Shown piece after piece: positions 3,197 through 63,912 of a DNA stretch of 64,000 nt. The translations under genes and the position numbers were made by a program. The DNA comes from Bigelowiella natans CCMP2755 (Eukaryota > Protista > Cercozoa): positions 24,587-88,586 of the forward strand of contig ADNK01000436.1 of the NCBI GenBank assembly GCA_000320545.1, read 5' to 3'. Below the pieces are notes generated by a model. The model saw only the letters and a program-made list of their open reading frames with translations, searched no databases and was not told the origin of the DNA. The first letter of the stretch is position 1. Each line of letters starts with the position of its first letter.

Positions 3197-3475
3197 TAAA
3201 CATGTATCTGATTCCATCCTCCCATGCTATCATCATTCAGACTGCACCTTCTAAGGAAGCTAGAGCTGCCATTCTCCTCATGTTTAACAGACGAGGTAGT
3301 AGGTCGTAGTAATAGAAGTACCCAGGAGGGGCGCGGGAAGGGTTGCTTGGGTGACCCGGAAAACAGCGATGAATGTAGTCTATCCTATGTGGCTCTGCTA
3401 TCGCTGTGCCGCACAATGGAAGCACGTCGTCGATGATGGAAGTCCTCGTAGTGTTGTTGTTGTTATTGTTTCCGC

Positions 3476-3512
<37 letters not shown>

Positions 3513-3874
3513 GAACGCTTTCACGCCACACTACGCCATTTCAATTTAAACCCTTGTTGTTATGATGATGATATGGAAGATGATGATGATGATGATGAGG
3601 TTGCTAAAGAACAAGTAGAAGACTATTTGATCTACATGTACACATGAATTCGTGTGTATGAATTTGTGTGTCGTCGTATACGCCTACACAGGGTGCGAAG
3701 CAGCTAGGAGACTGTTGCCCGGATTTGGAACTCGTCGATCTGTACGTCTTGCGATCATAATTTTAACAATAAGAGTGATAAATAAAGAAGAAGAAGAACA
3801 ACAAAATCGTTGGCAGCAAAATTGTTGCTCCGGTTCATTTCTTCATTCGTCTCAATATCTCTTCATCCCCCCCC

Positions 3875-3933
<59 letters not shown>

Positions 3934-4071
3934 AAACATACACACACCATATTAAACATCGCCATTCATGTTTCTACAGCTATGCATGCAAGCAGCTCTC
4001 CAACACAGGTAACTGCAGCTGGTGGTGGTAGGGGTAGGGGAACATATAGAATACGCACATATAAGCAAGCA

Positions 4072-4106
<35 letters not shown>

Positions 4107-5111
4107 ATGTTAATTATCACAAACTAGGACTTGTCCAAATGGCGAATAATCTACCTCATCTCCGCTGCTTAAACGTTAAGAGGTGGTGTGTGAGGGATAA
4201 TACACGAAGCAAACAACACATTCAGAACCACCATCAAAACCATCCACATTCTCAAGAGGAGGAGGAGCAAGAGGAAGGGGGAAATTCTCGGGTGCTAGCA
4301 CTGCCGGAAAAGGGATGCTTTGCAGGATAGAGAGTCTTTAATATCTTGAAATAACCCAAAGCGTCAGCAACAGTAGATGACGATGATGATGACGATGCTC
4401 ATATTCAAGCTTTGCTGCTGCTCCTCACGATAGTAATGATGATGACGATGATGTGGTGGTGGTTGCGTCAGATGCACACGGCTATCAAAACCGGGCGCTT
4501 TTGATGTCCTTGATCACGGCAGCATTCAACACATTCAGGTTCGTAGACAACCGACGATTATGGCCATTAGGCTATTTAGTAGAGCTCCTTTTGCCTTTCT
4601 CTTTTTGTCTATCTCTCGCTCTCTTGCTCTATAACATTCACATCTCCCTCCACTCTCTCAGCTTCCTAATTTCGCTGGACTTCTGAGTGCTGACGTCATG
4701 CTACGGGTTGTCAGAGACACGAGGATGATGACTCCAACCACACCGATAGCGATAACAATAATAATAATAATGATGATGATGATGAAAACATCGATCATTT
4801 CAGTTCATATGGCTTTGCAAATATGTACACCCACACCAGACCACAAACACACAAGTATGATGGATGTGTCGTCTTTTATGTACTCGTTATCATTATTGTA
4901 CACACACTGCGACTAATATCTGCTGCCTGCTACTCTTTTCCAGGTTGAACAGGCTGGCTTCACTCACGAAGGTGCAGGACGGCTTTTTGCCAGAAGCATT
5001 CAGATCCACAGATGGGGTAGGGGAAAGGCTTGGGCGAGGGCCAAGACGCTACATCCAACATCAGGATTGTTCCTCAGATGCTGCACTTGTAGGGGGGTGG
5101 GCCCATGCTAG
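153..5111 (+). CDS. F-box/leucine-rich-repeat (FBXL-type) protein, multi-exon
   Basis: Hand-spliced GT-AG exons give an F-box-like start (LQHLPPYLIR|KILEASGS) followed by AMN1/FBXL-type LRRs: MDDICLGKIIGPKCPNLLHLDISGNLT, ALKLIATNLPRLAYLRVEG, LGALKELRELRL, LHLLRKLELPFSSCLTDE, LVQMANNLPHLRCLNVKRC. Last exon modelled to TAG at 5109-5111; middle exons not all resolved. Confidence 0.75.
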
Positions 5112-5599
5112 CTAGCCGCTGGCTAATGCTCATCAGCAAGCGCATCATCTAATTAACGTATTGACAATGGCGATGATTCGCATAACGGATAGTGAGTTGC
5201 AGTGCGTGCAGCAAGAAAATCACTATGCAAGTCGAGTGCGAGCAGGCGCATGCGCATGCGTGAACGTGATATCTCAGCAGTTAATGTGCATGCGACACAT
5301 GTCTGCCTCGTGAATTGTGCAGCGAGTAGCACTACGTTTGATTGACAACCACTTTCGCTCTGCCATCATCCAATTGCTGGTCGGAATAGCGACCGGGAGC
5401 ACGGTGCGCGCGTGCAGCTGTGCGGCAGCATGCATGATCCTCGCGCGTGCACAGATCTCCTTTTTTTTCATCACTACTTCCGCATCCATCTATCATCTAA
5501 CTCATGGGAAACCCGATCATCTCACTACGAAACAAACACGGCGACTGGTACGATGCACTGGAAGTCGTCTTACTGCTACTAGGGCCATGCACAAATTTC

Positions 5600-51839: not shown

Positions 51840-53642
51840 CTAATGTATGGCTGCCGCGTACTCCTTCTCGACAGAAACGAGTTTATTGTAGATTTGGCGC
51901 GTCTCCTCACGAATAGCCGCCATCGATTCAGGATCTGTGCTTGTCGGCATCTGGACATTCCCCCTGATTGATGTATCTGCAGTGAGAATTTGGAACACCT
52001 GCTTCCCGCCCCCCATAGCCACTCATATTAGCTAATAAGTGGTACGGTGACTAACGAACAAAAATCATCCTGTGGTACTCCAGCAGCAGTATTAGCAGAG
52101 TAGCAGCAGACGCCGCACGACAAGGCGTCGAAGAACATCCATGCATATATGATGATACCGTATCTTGAGCTTTAGAAGGCATCTCCTCAGCTCCATCTCC
52201 ACGTCACGGGCGGAGGGACGCTTCGAAGGGTCAAGTGCGAATAGTTTCCTCCAAATCGCCAACGCACGCCCCATCCTCTTCTCAATGAGCAGCTCGCGGA
52301 TCTGCCGAGGGATAAGCTCACCTGCCGTCACCCGTTGGATGAGGGACCCGGTGTTCTGGAGAAGGAGGGGGGCGGGGGGGTGAGTGAGGAAGGGGGGAGG
52401 AGGAGGAAGGTTAGAAAGGATGGCAAAGCAGAAAATTGCCTATTCGTCGCTCTTCTAATATGGTGGCTCATCGGAGTCATGCACGATGAGGATGATGATG
52501 ATGATGGTGATGACGACCAGATTCTGCTCCTGCTCCTTCGCGATTAGGTAGCTTTGGATGTCAGTGAAGCCTTTCTCCTCGGACCAGGCGCGTGGCGTTT
52601 TTCCATAAAAGTCCTTTGCGTCAAGCCGCGCCCCTCCCTTTTCAACGAACAGTTTTACCATTGCTAGTCGGTCGTTGAAGCACGCCCAGATTAACGGTGT
52701 CGCTCCTTTCAGAAGAGTATAATGCAGGAAGAGAGCGGGGGCAGGAGAAGGAGGAGGAATGAAAATTAAAATTCAGTAGTTGAACAGACTGACGCCAGGC
52801 AATAACGATAATGACGATATTGATGATAATGATGATGACGACGGCGGTAATGTCTGTGGTTGTGGTGGTGTTGGCGGCGGTGGTAGTGAATATGACATGA
52901 TTAAGATGCAATAAGAGGATGAAGATAAAAAGAGGGCCCATGGTGGCTTCTCTCCATTCTTTTTCCTTTCACTTCCTTTACCGCTGCTCAGGCTCCCGAC
53001 AGCCTCGACGTTCGCCTTCGATTTGATGAGGAGCTGTGCAGCCTCCAATCTGTTCTGTAGGATAGGCTCGAAAAGGGGCGTGTAGCCAAGTGAGTTCTGT
53101 GCCTCAATATCAGCCTTCCGGTCAAGAAGATACTGCACGATTCCGATGTGACCTCTGTGCGACGCCGCATGCAGGGCCGTGGAGTTGCCCTGGTCGGGGT
53201 TTTTCGCTCGAAGATCTGGAAATACGCGCGAACACTGCGTCTCCTCCTTCCGGTCCTCCTTGGCGTCGTTGTTGTCGTCGTCATCATTGCTACCGCCATT
53301 CTTTTTCTCTATCATCACCCTCTCCCTCCTACCCTTTTGCTTGACCGGAAGGCCCTTCTCAAGAAGGGCTCGCGTTTCGTCAAATTTTCCTTTGAGGCAG
53401 TAGTCCCACAGTAAACGATCGACATCGGAAAACTCCTGAGAAATTGGGAAGGAGGGAAAGGCGGAGAGGGTGGGGGGGAGTTACGGTTAGGGTTCTGCCA
53501 ATGTCTGGGTGAGTGTGTGCTATGCTCCCTTCGAAATGATAAAAAACGGCTCTCATTAGCCCTGAAGAAGCTAGACAACACCTAAAATAAGGCTCTTACT
53601 TTTCCACGTTATTCCCTTTCAACTGAAACTCTCTTTGCCGGC

Positions 53643-53682
<40 letters not shown>

Positions 53683-56035
53683 CTCTCTCTCCCTCTCTTC
53701 CCCCCCCCCTACTCACATTCCCCCTCCCTTCCTTCTTCTGTACCCTCGCGACAAGATACTCTACAACGTCGTCGAGCCCCTTCGCCTCTGCCCACATACG
53801 CGCAGAGTTTTTTTTGTCATCCTTTGCATAGACGTCTGCGTGGCCCTCCTCCACAAGCACGCGCACTAGCCCCAGCCTTCGTTTTCCCTTATTCCATATG
53901 GCGCAGATAAGGGGAGTGGCAAGGTTGAGATCGCGGGCGTTGACATCGGCCCCTTGCTGAATGAGCCAGCGAGCCACCTCGACGCTGTGGTTTTTTGCTG
54001 CTTCAAAGAGAGGGGTATGGCATTGACGGTCCTTTGCCTCCAACCGCGCGCCCTTTTCAACCAGGTACCGAACGATGGCTTTTTAAGAATTTGCGGGAGA
54101 GGGAGGAGGGGTGAGGGGGAAAAGGGGGGGGGGTAATTGAGAAGCAGGAATACCGTTTGTTCACCGATGTGTACAGATGTGCGTGTGCGTGTGCGCGTGC
54201 GTGCGTGCGTGTGGAAAAGGTATTTATGCTACGTTGTGGTGGATGCTGCTTGCTTCGAAGTACCGAGAAAGTTACGATGCGCAGCGACTTGTAGGAGCGA
54301 GATAAATCTGATATGAGAGAGGACGAGACGTATTGCTGTTGTTGTTGATGATGTTGATCTTGACGTTGATAATGATAGTCATGAGACTTCGTGATGCATT
54401 GATTACCCTTTCTCAGCGTCACGGGCATTCACAAGTCTGAGGAGGGAGCTTTCCTCCTCAACCTCCTCCAACAACCTCTTCATCTCTGCCAGATTTCCGG
54501 TCGCGCAAGCTTTGAAGATCTCACGCTCATCGTGTGTGAGAGGCTGAAGATGTGCGTCAGCGGGATGAGAAATAGTAGTTTATAATAAATAAATAAATAA
54601 ATATATATATATATATATACCTGATTTATCTGCTAATGTGTGTTGGTGTGCGTACATCGTAACAGTAACATCCTTCGTTCCTCCTCATCCTCGCCCCCCC
54701 CCCCTCCTAGTTCTCACGTTCTATCTATCTATCTATCTATCTATCATCATCGTGGTACCCTAGCGCTTTCCGGGCTTGGCCTTCTATCTTTGCCGACTAC
54801 ATCACGCTGCACCTCCATGGTCATCACGTTCACCGGGTCAAACGAGGAGGATGGGCCGAACGAGGGGGGGGCTTGACTGGAGGAGGTGGTATCGATATAA
54901 GGAAAGACCTCTTCACTATCTTCGTAGTTCTTGGTAGAGGGGGGGGCATCGCCATCCATATCCTCGTAACGAGCGCCGGGAGCGTCGCCATCCATGTTCT
55001 CGTAATTAACGCCGTTGAAGTCTTCTTCACAATCCTCGAAGTTCTCGGTAGAGGCGGGAGCGTCGCCATCCATGTCCTCGTAATGAACGCCGTTGAAGTC
55101 TTCTTCACAATCCTCGAAGTTCTCGGTAGAGGCGGGAGCGTCGCCATCCATGTCCTTGGAATATTTGCTGGCGTCGTTGTTGTCCAGGGCGTTGTTCTCC
55201 CCCCCACTCTGCGACATCGTATCGGAATCGACGCGCTCTATACCGTCGCCTTCGCCTTTGCGCTCATCCTTTCCCTCCTCACCAGAGCTCTCGGAATAAG
55301 ATGATGATACTGCTTTCGGCCTCTGCGCTTCTTCTTCTTCTTCTTCTTTTCTTTTTCCTTTTTCTTCATCCTCCGTCCCTTCCCCCTCTGGGGAAGAGTC
55401 GGTGGCGGAGCTCGAGTTCCCCCTTTGGAAGGGGACGACGTCATCAACGTCGTGTGCTTCATATTTGGATTTACTCCGCAATTGCTGGAGAACGTCGCAT
55501 CCCTTTCCATCAAGCATAGATTCGCAAACCTAATCGGTGGCGGCGGGAAGAGAGTTTTTGTGTGGAGGTTAATGCTGATGCGTATAAAATCAAGGCCGCG
55601 ACATTTATCTTGCCGCATTGATTTTTTGGATGTGGGACAATAAGTCCAAAATGATGAGGATGATGATGATGATGCATTCTTCGATCTCCCCTTCCGCACA
55701 AAAAGAACGGGCTTGCCAGTGGACACGCCAAGGAAGAGCGGTAAATGAGAATGATAAATGAGTCATCCATGTCCGGCTCATGCAACCGACAAATCCATAT
55801 CGAAAATTGTTTGTTGTTGGTGGAGATACATGCGCCGCGCTTTGTCATGCGTATGTACTCAAAAACAGCGACTGAAGTGGCAACACCGATGAGTAGCTAC
55901 TTCTACTATTTAGGCTCTTCTTCCTACCTCACAGAACGTAATGCCCATGCTCCAAACGTCGCTCTTGGTCGAGAAACGACGAGATGATATTACCTTTGGA
56001 TATAGTCGCAGCAACAGGAGAGAGAAGAGAGAGAA

Positions 56036-56070
<35 letters not shown>

Positions 56071-56417
56071 GAAGAGAGAGAGAGGAAGAGAGAGAGAGGA
56101 AGAGAGAGAGAGGAAGAGAGAGAGAGGAAGAGAGAGAGAGGAAGAGGGGGGGGGGGACAGAAAATGAGGATAAGGGTGAAATAGGATCAGAATCGAGATA
56201 ACATCATCACTTTTCTTCTATCGAAAGTCGGTAAAAGCATCATTTTAGACAGCCCTCAAAAGTCACACCTCTGGAGGTTGCGAATACGGAGTGATCCCCC
56301 CTTCGGACACATCCAACACAAGCGAATCGACCTAAATCATAGGGGGGGCGTGGAGGCGCAAGAGATGAGATTCCCGTCTCATTTCCTCTAATTCTTCACA
56401 CATGCATGTAAATATTG

Positions 56418-56456
<39 letters not shown>

Positions 56457-57681
56457 ATGTGAGCCCACTCCCCCTCCTTAAAACTAGCAGCACACCAGCA
56501 CCTTCTTATCGGGGAGGACACGAGCTAAGTCAAAGTCCGTGATGAGAACCCTTTGCTCATGAAAGAGCACATTGCGTGCCGCGATGTCCCTATGGATGAT
56601 TCCGAGATCGTGCAAGTCCGCCACACCGGCGGATATCTGTATCATAGTTCGCAGGAGGAGGATGCAGAACTTGGAGAGAGGAGGAAAATGCAGGACAAGG
56701 GGGAAGAAGGAGAAGGAGGAGGGGGAGGGTGGGGGAAGGGGGAGGAGCTTATTATGGACATCGTCTTTGGCGGTTGCAAAACTGTTTTCGCCTGTACTTA
56801 GTCAATTACTTCCCCTTCTTCCACAATTCTATACTCGGGATTGTGTTTTCTTGTTCGTGGTTGCAAATCAGTGATACACAGCAAAAGTATGACTACAGCA
56901 ACATAACACTCACCTCTTCTTGGTCCGCCCCGTGCCAACCCCCCAACCCCCCCGGGCTCCCCCGGACCACCCCCCCCCCCCCCCCCTTCGCGGCCTTCTT
57001 GGCCTTCTTGTAGGACCTCTTGAGGGCGAAGAGCAGTCACCAGTAATGTGCGAAGGGTAGTCGCAGTAGGAGTATCCTCCGCCATGGCCCTAGTAGAATG
57101 ATATTGATGTTGTTGGTGACGTTGTAGTGAACATGGTGATGATGATGATGACGACGATTATGAGGAGGACAGTAGTAGTAGTAGTAGTAGTAGTAGTAAT
57201 AGTAGTAGCTGTTACTTGTGATGTTCCATGGCCGCCTTTTTCCTCCTTTCTTCTGGGTCCTAGCGCCAGGGCGCGCAGGACGACGAGATAGCTGCACATG
57301 CGCTCCCAGGCCACGCTGTCTTTCCATTTCTGTGTGAGATACGAGGAAGGAAGAGGAGGAGGAATAGGAGGGGAGAACACATGACAGTGATGGTGATGAA
57401 GATGGTATAGTTGACGCTATGAAATATCTAAAACAATGATATTTTCATGCTGGTGAAGAACTCGCCCCCCCCCCCCCCCCCATCCCCTACTTACCTTAAG
57501 CGCGAGGTAGGAGCCACGGTACTGCACCATAATGACCTGCTTGTACTTTCCCTGTCTTGTCACGCCACCGTGTATTTCGAGCTCATCGTAGTTAATGAGG
57601 AGGTCTGGAAACAGTGCTTTGGACGCCCAAGATCGGAATCTCTGTGAGTTCCAAAGGTTCTCCTCTTTCGCTTTCAATACA

Positions 57682-57734
<53 letters not shown>

Positions 57735-58299
57735 GGCTTTTGAGCTGCATTGAATACCCACCTATAGTAGAATGTGATAATATAATACCCTCGTAGTAAA
57801 TCTAGCACGGCAAAACGACGATGACGACTTAAGACAATTCTCCTGAGCACCACTTACGTTGGCCTTTTTCTTCCTGGTTGGCTGCCTTCGCCGCTTTGTC
57901 AAGCTTCGTCCGAAGAGCGCTCATCTCGCCGTTCCACTTCGCAACCTCGCGGATGTAGGAGCTCATTTCGAATGACACACCGTGGCTACAGGAGGAGCAG
58001 CACCAAAACCAAATGCATCGGTGGATGGTCATCAATGTATGCATATTCTCAAAATAGTCAATTTGTTAGAACCCAGCTCATCTCTCTTATTTTTAATAAC
58101 AGAATCATATATGCTGTTGCTGCTGCTGCTGCTGCTGTGCGTGCGTGCATGCAACGCAACAACACATCGCACACAGTGCGACATATTGCTTCTTCGCACT
58201 TGTCGCGGTCGAGTTTGAAATAGCGTCGTATGTCATCGATATAGCTTGAGAAGCCTGCGGCCGCCACCTAAATGTGATAATTGATTATTTAGAGCGATG

Positions 58300-58341
<42 letters not shown>

Positions 58342-59377
58342 TATTATCTGCTAAACCCCATCCTCAGCTGCGAAAGAAGATCCCTCCTCTCCCACCTCCT
58401 TCTCGCCTCACTTTAAGGCAAGGGGAAGATATCTCCCTATCGTCGTAATCCCCATCAAGATCATCATCATCATCATCATCATCATGATCATCATATTTAT
58501 CAGCGCCACGAGCAGAACCTTTTTCGCATCCAGATCGACGAAGTTTGCACCCTCCCTGTCTGCTGTACTGGCTGCTTTGCTGGCTGCTTTGGTGTGAGCC
58601 TCCAATACTAGTCTGAACATACGCGCATCATGATCGATGAAGACCTCGTTGAGACCCTGCGTAGATATAGGCCGACGGAAGGATAGAAGAGCGGGAGGGG
58701 GGGGGGAGGATTGCTTGTAAATCACAGAGTTCTCCAGTCCACACACGGAAATAATAATGATGATGAGAACATTGACGGCAATGATAGCAGCGATGATGAT
58801 AACAATGGCGTTTGTAGCACGCACGCAACTGCTGTTAGTGCTGGTGGGAACAACAAGCTGCACACCTGCCAGTAGGCCCCCCTTGCAAGAAAATCCGTCG
58901 AATCGTTGTTGGCGCTCTTGTCCATCGGTCTTAGTTTTCGGGCAAGGAAAAGGGAAAAGCGGGGAGGGGAGGGGAGAGAGAGGGAAAGAGTGAAATTTCA
59001 AAAATGGTAGGGAGACGGCGCGGGTGACATATTCTAGTTCTAATCGAGGAAACGTTAAAGAAAAGGATATTATTTTGTCTTTTCTCCCCCTTCTCACTTG
59101 CATTGAACTCCAATTCTCTCCTCTCTCTCCCCCTCTCCCTCCTTCGCCTCTTTGCCTTTCACCTTGGGTCGAAAATAGCTCCAAGAAGGGTGTAAGGGTG
59201 GGAGAGGAATGGGCCTACCTTTGCCTGCACAGTTATTTAGCTTTAAATATATGGCCATGAGTCAACAGATTTATTTATGCGTGTGTGTGTGTGCGGCCTC
59301 ATTGATTTCCCTTTCTGGAGCGCGCGTATTTTATGTACTACCCCCCCCCTCCCCCCCTCGCACGAAACACGCACACA

Positions 59378-59446
<69 letters not shown>

Positions 59447-60876
59447 CTGAATGATCTTCCCAAGGCAATTGAAAGTGGCTATAGCCTCGGGGTCAATAAG
59501 CGGCGTCGATATCACACCCGCCCCCTCCAGGAGCCGCAGAAACGCAGGGATGCTCTCGAAGTACTGTTCGGGCCTTCTCCTCTTCTTGCCCCTCCGCCTT
59601 CGGTTCTGCTCCCGTATCTTCATCTTCCTATGGAACCGGTATCCTCGGGCCGTGCACTCCAGCCAGACGGTGCGGATGGCGTAGCGGTTTCCTTGCAGAT
59701 CGTAGATGACCTGCTTCTGCGACAGAGCATCCTTTTCCTCCATCTTGTGGAGGTACCGCAGGGCGAAGGTGCCGGAGAGGCGGGCCGACAGCTTCACGGC
59801 GAACAAGCCGTTGCGCGCGCTCGCGCGCGTATATCTGGCAGTTTAGTGTTATATGCTGTGTTTCGTGGGGGTGGTAAATAACGATAGCGGCGCTGATGGT
59901 TGGAAAGCAATGTGATAGCATTTCAGGGAGAGGGAGGAGAAGACGTGCTAGCCATCGCATCCATCTCCTCTCTCTCCCTCTCCCTCTCTCTCTGCGTGTG
60001 TGTGTTTGTGTATGTGCGTGTGTGTCTGCAGCATCATATAAAGTAAAAACGCGTGCATATGTGTGAGTTACGCTACCCCCCTTCCCCTCGCCTCCCTCCC
60101 TCCTACTCCCCTCTGGCTGCTCACTTGTGGTTGAAAAGATGCTCGAGGTGCGAAGTGTTGTCATGAAGATGCAGCCACGGCTGGACGAAGGCGCGGGGGG
60201 CTCGGGGCGGGCGAGCGATCATCGGGTAGATGTGGCTTGCGAGGCGCTCGAACGGCCCGAAAAGGCGCAGAAGTCGCGCAAAGCTCTGTACGGTGATCTG
60301 GTCTACATGGCCTAGGATCATGCTGAAAAACCTCGATTCGTGGATTTCGTATATCAGCTCGCGCTTCTTTATCTGGTAGAACTCCGACTTCGACTTTCTG
60401 ATCTGCTGAATGCTGAGGCCTGTTGTAACAGTATCATTTTGCCGGGGTGGCGGGGAGGGGGGGGGGGGAAGGGGTTCGACGTTGGTCTCTGTGTCGTTGT
60501 GGTGATGGGGAGGATACGAGGGGGCAGGTGAGGGGGGGGGGGCGGGGCGGACGACTCTCCTCCTTACACCCCCCCCTCTTTCTCTCCTACTATTGGTATG
60601 GAGGGATTGTTGAAGCAGAAGATAGGGAGGCGGACATGTGGGCGTTTTGTTCTTCTTCTTACCCCATCTTGCCTCAATCGCCTGGTTGTAGTCCAGCAAG
60701 CTGTGGAGCAGCGTGGTCACGAAGCGTGTCTTTGCCACGGTCACGACAGAAGGACCGAAGTGCACCTCCCAGAAGATCAGGGCGTGATTTACCTGAGGCA
60801 TGGCATTCACAAGGGAATATTTATCGTATGTGCATGTAATATAATATCATAGAGAGAGTATGAGGGTGGGGGTAAT

Positions 60877-60915
<39 letters not shown>

Positions 60916-60946
60916 TATCATCATATAACGAGAGCCCGCGACTATT

Positions 60947-60978
<32 letters not shown>

Positions 60979-61522
60979 AATCATGCGAGGGAATAATCAT
61001 ACACTGCTGGTCTACTATCGCTACCACAATCACCACCACAACAACAACGACAAGCGGAAGCGGAAGCAGAACCAGAAATGACACCTTTGCCTTCTTCTTC
61101 CGGTCTTTGCGCTCCTTGTGTTCGTTGAGATAGCTTGAGCTCTTCTCTTCCCTCCCTCTTGACCGTCGACCTAGTGTCCCTCTCTCCTCCCTGCCTCTTC
61201 GGCCTCTCCTTACCCCTCCCCCTCCCCCTCTTCCCCGCGCACAAGCACATGCACATTTTGACCAAAAGGGTCAGAACGGTGATGAGGAAGAGGACGCCGA
61301 AGAGGAGGATTGATGACAAGTCCACCGACACCCACTCCAGCAGCGTCGAGGGGAGCGTGTAGAGCTCTCGCAGCGTCGCGAAAGATAGGGTGGGGACTGT
61401 GTCAGGGAACAGTATGTTCAACGGGCTGGAGTTCGTCGGGAGAGTGGGGAGCGGGGAGGAGGAGGGAGGAGATGTGGCAGTGAGAAGTTAGAAAGAAGCA
61501 ATGCGTTTTTACTCCACGCACA

Positions 61523-61580
<58 letters not shown>

Positions 61581-62563
61581 GAGAGAGCGAGAGAGAGATA
61601 GACACACGCACACATCTTTGGAGCATAATTTCCACGCAAAAGCACCAAAGTGAAATGTTTCAGATAATACGAGAAGTACATCACAGGAAGCAACACATGC
61701 TGAGACGCCCCATCATCTAGCGAAAACAGCAGTTGCAGTAGCAGTATCAGTAGCACTAGCAAAGCATGTAGCTGTGCGGGGATCTCACCGCAAAATCCCA
61801 AGAAATACGAATAGCGAGTCGATAGAGGCGTAGTATATGAGGGAAAAGCCTCCAACCAGGAACGGAGCCACCGCAACAAAGCTGATGTAGCGCCAAGAGG
61901 AGTGCTGCTTCCTACCATCCGCCTTCCACGTCGCATTCTTTCCTCCGGACGATGGAAGAGGGCTGGGTGGGGACGAGGAGGAGAAGCGGGTTAAGAAGGG
62001 GGGGTCATTTTTACTATCAGGCTGGTGACGGCTGCTGGTGTTACGGCTGCTGGTGTTATCAAAGGCGCTCCCAAGAAGGTTTCTCGTGCTAAATTGCTGG
62101 GCCAAAAGGGGAGGTTCGAGTGATTGTCCCCAACCCCCTCGTCGCATCCTTGGCTCCTCGGAATTAAATTTCGAGAGCACCGGAAATGCCCCCGGTAAGG
62201 GGATCATGAGCGTTTTGTTCTTCAGGATGGAGGGGGGCTGGACGGAGGAGGGCTGGATGGAGGAGGCCTGTTTCTGTTGGTCATCTTCTTCACATTGAAG
62301 TTCTCGGTGCACGCGCTCAAGCTCGCTCTTGACAATCGCGACGCGCTTGCGGCTTCGCATCTGCTCCTCCTCTGTTCGTGTCTTCTTTTTCACCTTATCC
62401 GACCACTGTAAGACCTGGTTCCTCAAGCTCTGCATCGATGGGGCCTCAAGTAGTGCCTAAACGGTTAGATCAGGTGATAGGATGACAACGTTTAGTGTAT
62501 AATAACTCTTTTGAATTATTTTATGTAAAAATTATACATATATATGTGTATGTATATAAATAA

Positions 62564-62597
<34 letters not shown>

Positions 62598-63912
62598 TCA
62601 TGCTTGCTGGATTACAGCATCAACAGCATTATGCAAATTGATTGCGTGGGCGACGGAATGACATTTTTACACGAAAGTAGATACGGCTCGGCTCGTATCT
62701 CCCAAATCATCCTTGTCGGTCAGGAAAGAGAGTACTAATAAATCTCATCTCGCGACACAGCTAACCACGGTGGTGGGCAATGCTCCTGTCATGAGACAAA
62801 GCTCATCGGTGCTTTCTATGCTCAATGTATTATAACACTCCATAGCTCTTTTTAGTGCGCTGCTGTGAGTATGGACTCTTCCTATCATCGGGCACCTTCT
62901 GCATTTCCTCCAGTGTAAGTCTCTTCTCCCTTTTCTTCCTGAGGAAGCCCTCCCTGTCTCCAATACCATCGCCGTCCTCGTCCTCGTCGTCATCAACATC
63001 GTCGTCCTCGTCCACCGCAAGGAAGAAAATACTACGGAGATAGCCTACAACCGCGTATGTCAACAGGGCCTGATGCCAGGGAGTAGAGAGAGTCAACAAA
63101 GGTGGATTCTCTATTTTCGTGACCGCCGCTGCTGTGTTCGACCATGATATCGATGTTGTCATCATCACCATCATCATCATCATCATCATCATCTCATCGC
63201 CAAATACACCCTCATCGTGACATGTGATCATCGCCATCGTCGTCATCATAAAGGTTACCAAAGCTCCCGTCTTCAGCATCCAGGCATTGTCGGCCTTCAA
63301 GATCCACGCGTAAAAAAACCCTTGCGCGGTCAGAGCCAATCGAGATCGAATGACAAGCAACCAGTAGTAACGCCTTAAATAATACGATGTACCACGATCG
63401 GCAGAAGGACAGAGAGTAATTTATGGGTAGGAGGTTAATATAGCTCGTAAACCCGAATAAGGAGCCTTCCTCCCCCCTCCCCCCATCGCAGAGAGTGAAT
63501 AAATCAAGCATGCGACGGATACTCTATATTTTATGTTGAGACCCTTCCCAATCCTTCCCAACGCCCAGATAGATTACTTGTGGTATCTAAGCCACGACAG
63601 AATGAGTCTTTTCTCTTCCACTTCCTTATTGCAACTGCTGCGGCTGCCGCCATCGCCGTCGTCGCCTCCACCTTCTCCGCTGGAATTATCAGTGTCCGTT
63701 CCTCCAAATAACAACACGTCGAAAACCTTGATCCAGAAGAGGATGGCATTCCAAGTTGTGCTCAAGCAGCCCGATGATTGCCTAGCAGGGCGGGGGATAA
63801 GATTATCACAAAATTTTTTGGTAATGGTAATGCACGCGAAGCTCACTCTGATGCAGCCTCTCCATCTCGTCTCCTGCGGCTCCTTCTGAATCGCGACTTC
63901 AAATTCCTGCAT
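51840..63912 (-). CDS. Multi-TM, SH2- and BTB-containing tyrosine-kinase-like protein with ankyrin repeats inserted in the kinase domain (5' end probably beyond the window)
   Basis: Minus-strand order: hydrophobic TM segments (63400-61250); EF/SH2-like (FARLLRLFGPF, QPWLH, GLFAVKLSARLSGTFALRY); BTB_2-like (IATFNCLGKII|AKVGPFLSHPYTLLGAIF...VFIDHDARMFRLVL); kinase YLALK, HRDIAARNVL (56571-56594), DFD, PPE, KSDVWSMG; acidic tract; two ankyrin clusters; WRKLFALDPSKRPSA; stop at 51840. Confidence 0.75.
54905..55156. repeat. Coding 78-bp tandem repeat (26 aa, MDGDAPASTENFEDCEEDFNGVxYEx)
   Basis: Unit starts at 54977, 55055 and 55133 (period 78), with a degenerate copy at ~54905-54970; inside ORF 54747-55517(-). 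Confidence 0.9.

What the first reader, a model, noticed from the sequence alone, without database searches (positions are those of the whole stretch)
56480..63912. Multi-pass membrane protein combining EF/SH2, BTB and a tyrosine-kinase-type catalytic loop in a non-holozoan
Seen: several TM segments, then FARLLRLFGPF/QPWLH/GLFAVKLSARLSGTFALRY, then a KCTD/T1-type BTB signature, then HRDIAARN. Known: HRD[LI]AARN is the tyrosine-kinase catalytic-loop signature. EF-hand plus SH2 units of this kind occur in Cbl and in Dictyostelium SH2 kinases. BTB_2 domains oligomerise and can recruit Cul3. Inference: one polypeptide may hold a phosphotyrosine writer, a reader and an oligomerisation/E3-adaptor module on a membrane sensor, a self-contained pTyr signalling unit in a protist alga. 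The TM-to-SH2 junction rests on a plausible phase-0 donor near 61003.
Basis: partly seen in the sequence, partly recalled or inferred. Interest (0 to 1): 0.8.

Follow-up and report, generated by a model that had tools for sequence, protein, structure and literature searches.

The report
Algal membrane kinase with SH2-like module
In the alga Bigelowiella natans, a stretch of exons on one strand may encode a membrane-anchored protein. It would join a calcium-hand/phosphotyrosine-reader-like module, a possible clustering domain and a tyrosine-kinase-like enzyme. Only the kinase and the calcium-hand-like part are solidly supported, and I could not show that the pieces belong to one gene.

Summary
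The quoted motifs are all present, on the minus strand of an intron-rich Bigelowiella natans locus.

**Kinase:** real. Pfam gives 43 bits on the HRDIAARN exon. Its best solved matches are Eph and ErbB tyrosine kinases. The P+1 loop is not tyrosine-kinase-type and the glycine loop is degenerate.

**SH2 and BTB:** no Pfam, PDB, language-model or fold hit on this locus, exon by exon.

**Family link:** the EF-like exons are homologous (pairwise E 1e-5 to 1e-7) to a chlorarachniophyte family I found here. It is transcribed in B. natans and Amorphochlora. Its order is coiled coil, transmembrane hairpin, EF-hand, SH2-like, BTB/T1-like. A low-confidence family model matches mostly SH2 domains. In this locus a colinear YTRASARNGLF motif aligns to the family's YIRASRKKGCF.

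**Gene model:** a GT-AG, phase-consistent exon chain runs from ATG 62435 to an acidic tail carrying YE[DN]MDGDAP repeats. No transcript was found. The stretch 63912-62830 is probably another gene.

**Verdict:** partly supported. It is a plausible new variant, an SH2-like/BTB-like membrane protein fused to a tyrosine-kinase-like kinase, but unproven.

The parts
61789..62435 (-). Candidate first coding exon (ATG 62435). Charged, coiled-coil-like N-terminus, Ser/Pro-rich stretch, then a 34-residue hydrophobic stretch (61892-61791). Donor GT at 61788, phase 2.
   Evidence: 216-aa ORF; Kyte-Doolittle scan; sequence read. No Pfam hit. No detectable similarity to the family N-terminus.
61005..61425 (-). 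Candidate exon with the strongest TM helix (61346-61230, LSSILLFGVLFLITVLTLLV), followed by a basic, Cys-rich juxtamembrane stretch.
   Evidence: The phases were worked out by hand from the ruler. Joining it to the EF exon is an inference.
60663..60792 (-). EF-like exon 1 (ALIFWEVHFGPS...), colinear with the family's LEFWRTNIGGQ.
   Evidence: Part of JGI model aug1.7_g3450 (P0001). hhalign places it at the right family position, but E is 0.27. AG/GT confirmed.
60125..60419 (-). EF-like exon 2. Degenerate EF-hand loop (ILGH--VDQITVQSF), the RLFGPFE helix, then a putative SH2 helix A (QPWLHLHDNTSHLEHLFNH).
   Evidence: BLASTP against the paralog exon in L010: E 1e-7. hhalign against family alignment A3: E 6e-4. 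P0001 against the Amorphochlora protein P0003: E 1e-5. Best hit of the family HMM in the whole six-frame window, though only E 0.5. No Pfam or PDB hit.
59447..59834 (-). SH2-like exon. (K)YTRAS | ARNG | LFAVKLS | GTFALRYLH, then a basic insert, then YFESIPAFLRLL.
   Evidence: MAFFT and BLASTP place YTRASARNGLF on the family's YIRASRKKGCF, but not significantly. PDB phmmer: Crk SH2 at E 0.76. No Pfam hit and no ESM support. AF2 pLDDT 43, with no SH2 among fold matches.
58519..58656 (-). BTB/T1-like exon (GLNEVFIDHDARMFRLVLEAH...). Possible further micro-exons at 59240-59219, 59039-59017, 58916-58866 and 58267-58200.
   Evidence: Motif only. No Pfam, PDB or family alignment. Splice sites and phases are consistent, but the micro-exons are uncertain.
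57858..57985 (-). Coiled-coil-like linker exon (SSYIREVAKWNGEMSALRTKLDKAAKAANQEEKGQ). It also contains in-frame Met codons that could start a separate kinase gene.
57495..57682 (-). Kinase exon, subdomains I-II. Degenerate glycine loop (HGGVTRQGKYKQV) and the beta3 Lys in LALK.
   Evidence: Read. No Pfam hit on its own. AG/GT and phase.
57216..57329 (-). Kinase exon with a candidate helix C Glu (AWERM). Subdomains IV-V were not placed with confidence in 57215-56670.
   Evidence: No Pfam hit.
56502..56669 (-). Kinase catalytic exon: HRDIAARN and DFD (in place of DFG).
   Evidence: PF07714 43.4 bits, E 3e-11. Best PDB matches are EphA5, ErbB2, EGFR and a choanoflagellate RTK, at E 1e-7. Genome paralogs carry HRDIA[AC]RN.
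56269..56331 (-). Kinase micro-exon for the activation segment / P+1 loop (SEGGITPYSQPPE). Not the tyrosine-kinase P-I/V-K/R-W-x-APE type.
   Evidence: Read. AG/GT, phase 0 to 0. No Pfam hit.
55928..55993 (-). Kinase exon, subdomain IX (SDVWSMGITFCE).
   Evidence: PF07714 19.8 bits, E 5e-4.
54750..55529 (-). 260-codon open frame that starts exactly at an AG acceptor in phase with the kinase. Acidic, with an in-frame 78-nt tandem repeat giving four copies of Y-x-[DN]-M-D-G-D-A-P (YSKD, YEDM x2, YENM), followed by YEDSEE and PYID.
   Evidence: No Pfam hit.
62833..63912 (-). Two ORFs (63912-63577 and 63420-62833) with hydrophobic stretches, ending in a stop before an AT-rich spacer. Probably a separate upstream membrane-protein gene. 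A phase-0 GT (62842) to AG (62457) splice cannot be excluded.
   Evidence: Only weak Pfam hits (NMN_transporter, E 0.007).

Best explanation
The locus encodes a divergent member of a chlorarachniophyte-specific family of membrane-anchored signalling proteins. The family architecture is a cytosolic coiled coil, a transmembrane hairpin, an EF-hand-like domain packed against an SH2-like domain, and a T1/KCTD-like BTB domain. In this copy the family body is followed, through a short coiled-coil linker, by a tyrosine-kinase-like catalytic domain and an acidic tail with repeated Tyr motifs.

Likely working (inferred): the BTB/T1-like and coiled-coil parts cluster the protein at a membrane. Clustering lets the kinase domains phosphorylate each other's Tyr-rich tails. 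The SH2-like domain, of the same protein or of kinase-less paralogs such as P0002, then reads those sites.

Shown here:
- The kinase is real and its catalytic loop is of the tyrosine-kinase type.
- The EF-like exons are homologous to the family.
- The family is transcribed, and its model is SH2-like.
- A GT-AG, in-phase exon chain exists.

Inferred only:
- SH2 and BTB folds in this copy.
- One transcript covering all parts.
- Tyr specificity, clustering, and any Cul3 link.
For: Organism and partial gene model: JGI Bigna1 aug1.7_g3450.

Kinase: Pfam. The catalytic exon's best solved matches are tyrosine kinases. The closest intact paralog kinase (L020) has only tyrosine kinases among its 60 best PDB matches, at E 1e-35 to 1e-31.

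Family: L015 holds one 763-aa open frame. It matches at 100% identity the 743-aa product P0002 of a 2.6-kb JGI contig (L017) and is 39% identical to the Amorphochlora protein P0003, which is encoded uninterrupted on a 1.9-kb contig. I take both contigs for transcripts from their size and uninterrupted frames. Both proteins have TM-like stretches near residues 100-140.

Family domains:
- EF-hand and IBP39 weak Pfam hits.
- Cbl_N2 at E 0.0026 on the L010 exon.
- The family profile's only PDB hits are the SOCS1 SH2 FLIRDS strand, at E 0.6.
- phmmer's only PDB hits are the Kv4.3 T1 domain, at E 0.45.
- The AF2 secondary-structure order is helices, then aA-bB-bC-bD..aB, then BTB-like.
- 11 of the 50 best chains among 48,161 are SH2, as are about 30 of the 50 best after re-alignment, with up to 29% identity to Fyn SH2.
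- Kv and KCTD15 T1 domains are among the Foldseek rows with the highest probability.

This locus against the family: EF region; YTRASARNGLF against YIRASRKKGCF.

Exon chain: all AG/GT, phases consistent, introns 100-546 nt.
Against: - No SH2, Cbl or BTB profile hit on any exon here.
- No relative of P0001 at E <= 0.001 among 1.84 billion proteins.
- No ESM support.
- The single-exon AF2 model is poor (pLDDT 43) and matches no SH2.
- hhalign and BLASTP find no alignment of the SH2-like or BTB-like exons to the family.
- The family HMM against the six-frame window gives only E 0.5 for the EF exon, and nothing for SH2 or BTB.
- The family model itself is low confidence (pLDDT 48.6, best Z 6.5).
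- No transcript contig carries the SH2-like exon.
- The only JGI model stops at 60121.
- The BTB micro-exons and kinase subdomains IV-V could not be placed.
- The glycine loop, DFD and PPE are atypical, so the kinase may be weak or dead.
Confidence: 0.4

Rival explanations
1. There are two or three neighbouring genes on the same strand. One is a family-type TM/EF/SH2-like/BTB-like gene without a kinase, as in the paralogs P0002 and P0003. The other is a separate tyrosine-kinase-like kinase gene, starting at a Met in the 57985-57858 exon and running into the acidic tail and the ankyrin exons. The TM part could also be its own gene, ending at the stop at 60981.
For: The transcribed paralogs end after the BTB-like part and carry no kinase. 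The JGI Augustus model treats 60801-60121 as a gene of its own. In-frame Met codons exist in the linker exon. The frame after 58519 can run on to a stop at 58411. No hit was found in the contig scan for the SH2-like exon, so nothing spans the junctions.
Against: Gaps between the proposed exons are 100-546 nt with GT-AG ends and matching phases throughout. There is no AT-rich spacer like the one at 62830-62450. The first kinase exon has no in-frame start of its own, so it must be spliced to something upstream. The Augustus model ends at a stop that a GT donor two bases earlier would bypass.
Confidence: 0.3
2. Only the kinase is real. The EF/SH2 and BTB readings in this locus are chance motif resemblances in a lineage-specific, otherwise uncharacterised N-terminal region.
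For: Every direct test on this locus was negative or non-significant. The BTB reading rests on about 17 residues.
Against: The EF-like exon matches three family members independently (E 1e-7, 6e-4, 1e-5). L015 was recovered with a weak genome-wide hit (E 0.06), yet it shows the predicted TM, EF-hand, SH2-like, BTB-like order in one open frame. That is not expected of a chance hit. The SH2-like strand motif is colinear with the family's.
Confidence: 0.2
3. It is a decaying or silent paralog: a former family member plus kinase, now riddled with microsatellites and degenerate motifs, and not making a working protein.
For: The EF loop, glycine loop, DFD and PPE are degenerate. Triplet and dinucleotide repeats lie inside or beside exons. 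The contig scan for the SH2-like exon found nothing, whereas a 2.6-kb contig exists for the paralog P0002.
Against: Long exons stay open: 216, 129 and 260 codons. All catalytic residues (Lys, HRD Asp, Asn, DFD Asp) are kept. The 78-nt tail repeat is in frame. Splice sites are intact.
Confidence: 0.1

Closest known systems
Chlorarachniophyte TM / EF-hand / SH2-like / BTB-like family found here (B. natans P0002 = L015 ORF; Amorphochlora amoebiformis AAMO2058_000785400 = P0003; B. natans paralog in L010)
   Same: The EF-like region is homologous. The order of FW motif, EF loop, FGP helix, R-x-S strand and F-x-D/E-D-x-x-x-F-x-x-V-L motif is the same. Hydrophobic anchor segments lie upstream.
   Different: This copy has a degenerate EF loop lacking two residues and the acidic ligands. 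Its SH2-like and BTB-like parts are much more divergent. It has many introns, and a kinase plus acidic Tyr-repeat tail downstream. The family is unnamed and, as far as my searches went, undescribed.
Cbl tyrosine-kinase-binding domain (four-helix bundle, EF-hand, SH2; Pfam Cbl_N, Cbl_N2, Cbl_N3)
   Same: An EF-hand-like unit lies directly before an SH2-like unit. The helix after the EF loop (RLFGPFE) resembles the Cbl_N2 C-terminal helix. The L010 paralog hits Cbl_N2 at E 0.0026. Cbl is rank 4 of the PDB hits of the two-sequence profile, at E 0.58.
   Different: No RING finger. There is no Cbl_N, N2 or N3 hit on this locus. It is membrane anchored. It is not a Cbl orthologue.
Dictyostelium SH2-domain proteins: five predicted dual-specificity kinases with SH2, a Cbl orthologue, and FbxB (F-box + ankyrin + SH2) (PMC2906285). 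TKL kinases that phosphorylate STATc on Tyr (PMC4196871).
   Same: A non-metazoan joins an SH2 module to a kinase that is not a classical metazoan tyrosine kinase. It also joins SH2 modules to ubiquitin-ligase adaptor domains.
   Different: Different supergroup (Rhizaria). There is a membrane anchor and an EF-hand. A BTB/T1-like domain replaces the F-box. The catalytic loop here is HRDIAARN. No sequence relationship was tested.
SOCS proteins (SH2 + SOCS box recruiting ElonginB/C-cullin ligases; PMC2225448)
   Same: If the BTB-like part binds a cullin, the logic would be the same: an SH2 reader delivering pTyr proteins to a cullin ligase. SOCS1 SH2 is the only PDB sequence hit of the family profile.
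   Different: A BTB/T1-type domain, not a SOCS box. T1/KCTD domains often only oligomerise. Cullin binding is untested.
Holozoan receptor tyrosine kinases (Eph, ErbB)
   Same: The catalytic exon's best solved matches. Membrane anchor plus kinase plus a Tyr-rich C-terminal tail.
   Different: No recognisable extracellular domain. The anchor is probably a hairpin or multi-pass. The P+1 loop is GITPYSQPPE. DFD replaces DFG. SH2-like and BTB-like parts sit in cis. Membership of the TK group was not tested by phylogeny.

Membership tests
Protein kinase superfamily (PF07714 / PF00069) | Profile match above the curated cut-off | tested here: met
   Exon 56669-56502: PF07714 43.4 bits (cut-off 23.1) and PF00069 39.4 bits (cut-off 31.7). 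Exon 55993-55928: 19.8 bits (below the cut-off, short exon).
Protein kinase superfamily (PF07714 / PF00069) | Catalytic residues: beta3 Lys, helix C Glu, HRD Asp, catalytic-loop Asn, DFG Asp, and the GxGxxG loop | tested here: inconclusive
   LALK, AWERM, HRDIAARN and DFD are present. The glycine loop reads HGGVTRQG, DFG is DFD, and APE is PPE. Subdomains IV-V were not located. Subdomain X-XI-like sequence appears only at 52439-52095.
Tyrosine kinase (TK) group | Catalytic loop HRD[LI]AARN | tested here: met
   HRDIAARN at 56669-56502. Paralogs carry HRDIA[AC]RN.
Tyrosine kinase (TK) group | Subdomain VIII P-[IV]-[KR]-W-[TM]-A-P-E | tested here: not met
   The candidate exon 56331-56269 reads GITPYSQPPE, closer to the G-T-P-x-[YW]-x-APE type of TKL and Ser/Thr kinases. 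This comparison is from my own knowledge of the motifs.
Tyrosine kinase (TK) group | Groups with TKs rather than TKLs in comparison or phylogeny | tested here: inconclusive
   The catalytic exon's best PDB matches are Eph, ErbB and EGFR. The 60 best PDB matches of the paralog L020 are all TKs.
SH2 domain (PF00017 / Cbl_N3 PF02762) | Profile or sequence match | tested here: not met
   No Pfam hit at E <= 10 on 60417-60127 or 59833-59447. The genome-wide PF00017 and PF02762 scans do not pick up this locus. PDB phmmer gives Crk SH2 at E 0.76 only.
SH2 domain (PF00017 / Cbl_N3 PF02762) | Fold aA-bB-bC-bD-(bE/bF)-aB | tested here: inconclusive
   Exon model: pLDDT 43, strands and a late helix in a compatible order, but no SH2 among the 50 best structural matches. 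Family model (paralog): SH2 domains dominate the matches, Z 4-5.8.
SH2 domain (PF00017 / Cbl_N3 PF02762) | Invariant Arg at betaB5 (FLVRES strand) | tested here: inconclusive
Alignment to the family puts the R of KYTRAS on the family's conserved R of YIRAS / GIRQS.
SH2 domain (PF00017 / Cbl_N3 PF02762) | Binds phosphotyrosine peptides | not testable with these tools
   Needs recombinant domain and pTyr peptide binding assays.
Cbl TKB (EF-hand part, PF02761) | Cbl_N2 profile match and a RING finger downstream | tested here: not met
   No Cbl_N2 hit on this locus. Only the paralog exon in L010 scores, at 18.8 bits against a cut-off of 22. No RING-like exon was seen.
BTB_2 / T1 (PF02214) | Profile or sequence match | tested here: not met
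   No hit on 58656-58519, 58267-58202 or the 268-aa frame. The genome-wide PF02214 scan lists three other loci, not this one. The joined exons were not searched.
BTB_2 / T1 (PF02214) | BTB/T1 fold and oligomerisation | tested here: inconclusive
   Paralog only: Kv4.3 T1 at E 0.45. Foldseek: Kv4.3, Kv1.3, Kv1.2 and KCTD15 at probability 0.28-0.47 and 24-26% identity. Nothing for this locus.
Chlorarachniophyte TM/EF/SH2-like/BTB-like family (P0002, P0003) | Homology of the EF-like region | tested here: met
   BLASTP 1e-7 against the L010 exon, hhalign 6e-4 against A3, BLASTP 1e-5 P0001 against P0003. These E-values are for single comparisons. The family HMM against the whole six-frame window ranks this exon first, but at E 0.5.
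Chlorarachniophyte TM/EF/SH2-like/BTB-like family (P0002, P0003) | Colinear SH2-like and BTB-like parts, and an upstream TM anchor in the same protein | tested here: inconclusive
   The motifs are colinear and TM-like stretches lie upstream. However, the alignments are not significant, and continuity of the transcript is unknown.

The most novel reading that the evidence does not exclude
Chlorarachniophytes built their own phosphotyrosine system. It would consist of a family of membrane-anchored EF-hand/SH2/BTB proteins acting as calcium-tuned pTyr readers that oligomerise or feed targets to Cul3. One member would have captured a tyrosine-kinase-like domain and a YxxM-type docking tail, giving a receptor-like kinase with writer, reader and substrate in one chain, evolved independently of animal receptor tyrosine kinases.
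Probability: 0.15. Interest if true: 0.8.

Novelty: new variant of a known kind. Interest (0 to 1): 0.5.

Why it matters
Phosphotyrosine signalling with dedicated writers and SH2 readers is usually told as a holozoan story, with a side branch in amoebozoans. If a rhizarian alga carries a transcribed, genus-spanning family of membrane SH2-like/BTB-like proteins, that widens the picture. If one copy is truly fused to a kinase whose catalytic core looks most like tyrosine kinases, it widens it further. It would also give a simple, testable case of a self-contained pTyr unit. Even without the kinase fusion, an SH2 joined to a BTB/T1 domain would be a further way of coupling pTyr reading to oligomerisation or cullin ligases, besides Cbl (RING), SOCS (SOCS box) and Dictyostelium FbxB (F-box).

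Tried and rejected
**Direct tests on this locus (all negative or non-significant)**
- Pfam on raw ORFs and on trimmed exons: only the kinase hits.
- PDB phmmer of P0001, the SH2-like exon and the BTB-like exon: nothing significant.
- ESM Atlas for P0001 and the SH2-like exon: no lead, recognition below threshold.
- phmmer of P0001 against 1.84 billion representatives: only itself.
- Word search with the SH2-like frame: nothing.
- AF2 of the SH2-like exon alone: pLDDT 43, uninformative fold search.

**Own-genome searches**
- Single exons found only themselves.
- The weak hit L002 is a basic low-complexity stretch opposite a methionyl-tRNA synthetase gene. Rejected.
- The L006 'EF' hit lies in a non-coding-looking frame upstream of a true BTB_2 gene. 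Rejected as chance.
- L005 is an ankyrin-BTB gene, not this family.
- The WYHG..YLVRE exon of L010 gave no SH2 hit. Its weak hits are to hippocalcin-type EF proteins, so I do not use it as SH2 evidence.

**Other searches**
- Two scans of JGI contigs, one with the family alignment and one with the SH2-like exon: nothing.
- Upstream ORFs against the family N-terminus: no similarity.
- Papers: no description of SH2 proteins or tyrosine kinases of Bigelowiella, and nothing linking IBP39 to SH2.

**Steps not run**
I took coordinates from the sequence ruler instead.
The only spliced sequence used is JGI's own model P0001, as returned by a tool.

Full report
**What is there**

The region is part of an intron-rich eukaryotic locus read on the minus strand. 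A word search with the 241-codon open frame 60846-60124 returned one protein. This is the JGI Bigelowiella natans model aug1.7_g3450 (P0001, 145 aa), 100% identical.

**The kinase**

The exon 56669-56502 (ILLLRTMIQISAGVADLHDLGIIHRDIAARNVLFHEQRVLITDFDLARVL) scores 43.4 bits on PF07714, against a cut-off of 23.1. The exon 55993-55928 (SDVWSMGITFCE) scores 19.8 bits.

Reading the sequence gives further exons:
- 57682-57495 holds beta1-beta3, with LALK.
- 57329-57216 holds a candidate helix C.
- 56331-56269 holds the activation segment, SEGGITPYSQPPE.

So the finding's left border at 56480 cuts through the kinase.

The catalytic exon's best solved matches are EphA5, ErbB2, EGFR, EphA8 and a choanoflagellate receptor kinase, at E about 1e-7. 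Its closest relatives in the genome carry HRDIACRN or HRDIAARN. One of them is an intact single-exon kinase (L020). All 60 of its best PDB matches are tyrosine kinases (Mer, ITK, PTK6, BMX, ACK1, FAK, EGFR), at E 1e-35 to 1e-31. The genome holds at least about 150 PF07714 matches.

The kinase is therefore one of a lineage-specific set whose core resembles tyrosine kinases. It is atypical in several ways:
- The glycine loop reads HGGVTRQG.
- DFG is DFD, and APE is PPE.
- The P+1 region is not the P-I/V-K/R-W-x-APE of tyrosine kinases.
- Subdomains IV-V could not be placed among microsatellite-rich sequence.

No tree was made, because that needs the exons joined.

**SH2 and BTB: direct tests**

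Exon by exon, nothing supports them:
- Pfam gave no hit at E <= 10.
- PDB sequence searches gave only Crk SH2 at E 0.76 for the SH2-like exon, and nothing for P0001 or the BTB-like exon.
- The ESM Atlas gave nothing.
- A full HMMER pass of P0001 over 1.84 billion proteins found only itself.
- AlphaFold on the SH2-like exon alone gave pLDDT 43, and its structural matches include no SH2.
- Genome-wide scans with the SH2, Cbl_N2, Cbl_N3 and BTB_2 profiles do not pick up this locus.

**A family that explains the resemblance**

The Cbl_N2 scan found one weak match elsewhere in the genome (C3310). That locus (L010) has three relevant exons...DARDFWLKNFQEV......GDGNKKDVSSQEFDKFVRRFGPFENCIENVF..., and a BTB-like ...HSFPDDEIIVFLRCLSMYG. 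The middle exon scores Cbl_N2 at E 0.0026, below the cut-off. It aligns with our exon 60419-60125 at E 1e-7 for the single comparison.

A profile of the two found a third locus (C2723, E 0.06). There, one 763-codon open frame holds the following parts in order:
- a coiled coil;
- a hydrophobic anchor;
- LEFWRTNIGG;
- a canonical EF loop, DPNNDDVVSVEEF;
- YFGPL;
- GTFGIRQSRQKGCFTYNIKL;
- IMEAGGKRF...HSFNEDPEIFSKVLRYYLNG.

This frame matches at 100% identity the 743-aa product (P0002) of a 2.6-kb JGI contig. It has a 39%-identical relative in Amorphochlora amoebiformis (P0003), encoded uninterrupted on a 1.9-kb contig. I take both contigs for transcripts, from their size and uninterrupted frames. 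The family is therefore expressed and shared between genera. Both proteins have TM-like stretches around residues 100-140.

Each domain test on the family is weak, but they agree:
- Pfam gives EF-hand and IBP39 sub-threshold hits on the EF region.
- The only PDB hits of the two-sequence profile are the FLIRDS strand of SOCS1 SH2, at E 0.6.
- The only PDB hits of the single sequence are the Kv4.3 T1 domain, at E 0.45.
- The AlphaFold model has pLDDT 48.6 and pTM 0.36. It shows five helices, then aA-bB-bC-bD...aB, then a beta-beta-alpha BTB-like unit.
- Foldseek gives nothing significant. Its highest-probability rows are SH2 domains (STAP-1, Crk/CED-2, Spt6, Itk, Fyn) and T1/KCTD domains (Kv4.3, Kv1.3, Kv1.2, KCTD15).
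- An exhaustive structural comparison puts 11 SH2 domains among the best 50 of 48,161 chains, with STAP-1 at Z 5.8.
- After re-alignment, about 30 of the best 50 are SH2 domains, with up to 29% identity to Fyn.

I take the SH2-like fold of the family as likely, about 0.8. I take the T1/BTB-like fold as probable, about 0.6.

**How this locus relates to the family**

The EF-like exon is homologous:
- hhalign against the family gives E 6e-4 over 42 columns.
- P0001 against the Amorphochlora protein gives E 1e-5 over 74 columns.
- The L010 comparison above gives E 1e-7.

These are single-comparison E-values. A family HMM run over all six frames of the window ranks this exon first of 2,758 segments, but only at E 0.5.

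Compared with the family, our EF loop lacks two residues and the acidic ligands. It probably no longer binds calcium.

The FW motif upstream sits at the matching place. Downstream, MAFFT and BLASTP put (K)YTRASARNGLFAVKLS on the family's YIRASRKKGCFTYCVKL. The Arg of the phosphate pocket would be the R of KYTRAS, which straddles the splice junction 60125|59834. LFAVKLS would then be strand C, not strand B.

None of this is significant on its own. The SH2-like and BTB-like exons give no hhalign or BLASTP alignment to the family. The BTB reading in this locus rests on LNNCAGK and EVFIDHDARMFRLVLE alone.

**One gene or several**

By hand, from the ruler, I could lay out the following chain:
- ATG 62435-61789
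- 61425-61005
- 60792-60663
- 60419-60125
- 59834-59447
- uncertain micro-exons (59240-59219, 59039-59017, 58916-58866)
- 58656-58519
- 58267-58200
- 57985-57858
- 57682-57495
- 57329-57216
- a gap of 546 nt, where subdomains IV-V should lie
- 56669-56502
- 56331-56269
- 55993-55928
- 55529-54750

Every boundary from 60792 down was checked by script. All have AG/GT, consistent phases, and introns of 100-546 nt. The two upstream junctions I read by eye.

This shows a single gene is possible, not that it exists. Several points count against it:
- The JGI model is a short ab initio piece that stops at the TGA at 60121.
- The paralogs have no kinase.
- The linker exon contains Met codons that could start a separate kinase gene.
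- A scan of JGI contigs for the SH2-like exon found nothing.

The stretch 63912-62830 ends in a stop. It is followed by an AT-rich spacer (GC 0.40) and a fresh ATG. I read it as a separate gene, although a phase-0 splice from 62842 to 62457 cannot be excluded.

**Downstream**

The 260-codon frame 55529-54750 begins exactly at an AG acceptor in phase with the kinase. It is acidic and holds an in-frame 78-nt tandem repeat with 98% matches. The repeat yields four copies of Y-x-[DN]-M-D-G-D-A-P, followed by YEDSEE and PYID.

Further down lie ankyrin exons (Pfam E 1e-7 to 1e-18). A kinase subdomain X-XI-like piece (ALDPSKRPSARDV) lies at 52439-52095. That arrangement is the subject of another note (s1-766112), and I did not resolve it.

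**Mechanism proposed**

This is inferred. The protein would be anchored in a membrane with both ends in the cytosol. The coiled coil and the T1/BTB-like domain would cluster it. The kinase domains would then phosphorylate the Tyr repeats in trans. The SH2-like domain, in cis or on kinase-less paralogs, would bind them.

Dictyostelium shows that non-metazoan SH2 proteins include predicted dual-specificity kinases and an F-box protein (PMC2906285). It also shows that TKL kinases can do the Tyr phosphorylation (PMC4196871). SOCS proteins show the SH2-cullin logic (PMC2225448).

**Limits**

That joined step is what would most directly test SH2, BTB and kinase class. The only spliced sequence used was JGI's own P0001.

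**Verdict**

The most solid new result is the family itself. The fusion to a kinase is plausible, about 0.4, and untested.

Noticed in passing
L015:340-2631 (-) = G000:C2723:113448-115739; L017; L016: An unnamed protein family, transcribed and shared by B. natans (P0002, 743 aa) and Amorphochlora amoebiformis (P0003, 623 aa, 37-45% identical). Its order is coiled coil, TM hairpin, canonical EF-hand loop (DPNNDDVVSVEEF), SH2-like domain, T1/BTB-like domain. No Pfam family reaches its cut-off.
   Followed up: partly
window 54750-55529 (-): An acidic 260-codon frame with an in-frame 78-nt tandem repeat (54977-55156, 98% matches). It gives repeated Y-E-[DN]-M-D-G-D-A-P units, which look like tyrosine docking or phosphorylation sites of the YxxM / YxN type.
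   Followed up: partly
window 52095-54579 (-): Two clusters of ankyrin-repeat exons (Pfam E down to 8e-18), then a piece that reads like kinase subdomains X-XI (ALDPSKRPSARDVEMEL). The kinase may carry a very large insert, or these may belong to another transcript. This is the subject of note s1-766112.
   Followed up: partly
L020 = G000:C1415:22969-26112 (-), and L019, L021, L022: B. natans kinases with HRDIA[AC]RN loops and a W-x-W-M-A-P-E segment. For the intact L020 domain, all 60 best solved matches are tyrosine kinases, none TKL. It sits in a 927-aa frame with Sel1-like repeats. The genome has at least about 150 PF07714 matches.
   Followed up: partly
L010 = G000:C3310:81000-90999 (+), exons near 3337-3534, 3983-4114, 4367-4555, 4985-5125: An AT-rich paralog of the EF/BTB-like family. 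One exon scores Cbl_N2 at E 0.0026. Another (WYHGYLEDC...YLVRE) looks SH2-like by eye, but its weak PDB hits are hippocalcin-type EF proteins.
   Followed up: partly
window 62833-63912 (-): Two ORFs with hydrophobic stretches and an acidic/basic tail, ending before an AT-rich, (TA)n-containing spacer. Probably a separate small membrane-protein gene with no family assignment.
   Followed up: partly
L005 = G000:C3696:12000-21999 (-): A gene with many ankyrin-repeat exons followed by a true BTB_2 domain (KINVGGRIF..., FFVDRSPERFSYVLDWLRDG).
   Followed up: no
window 56900-57250, 58430-58500, 60850-61000, 63150-63200 (-): Triplet microsatellites that translate into long runs of Thr, Tyr, Met, Asp or Cys. 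They lie inside or right next to open frames. Poly-G runs near 56970 and 57470 could hide assembly indels.
   Followed up: no
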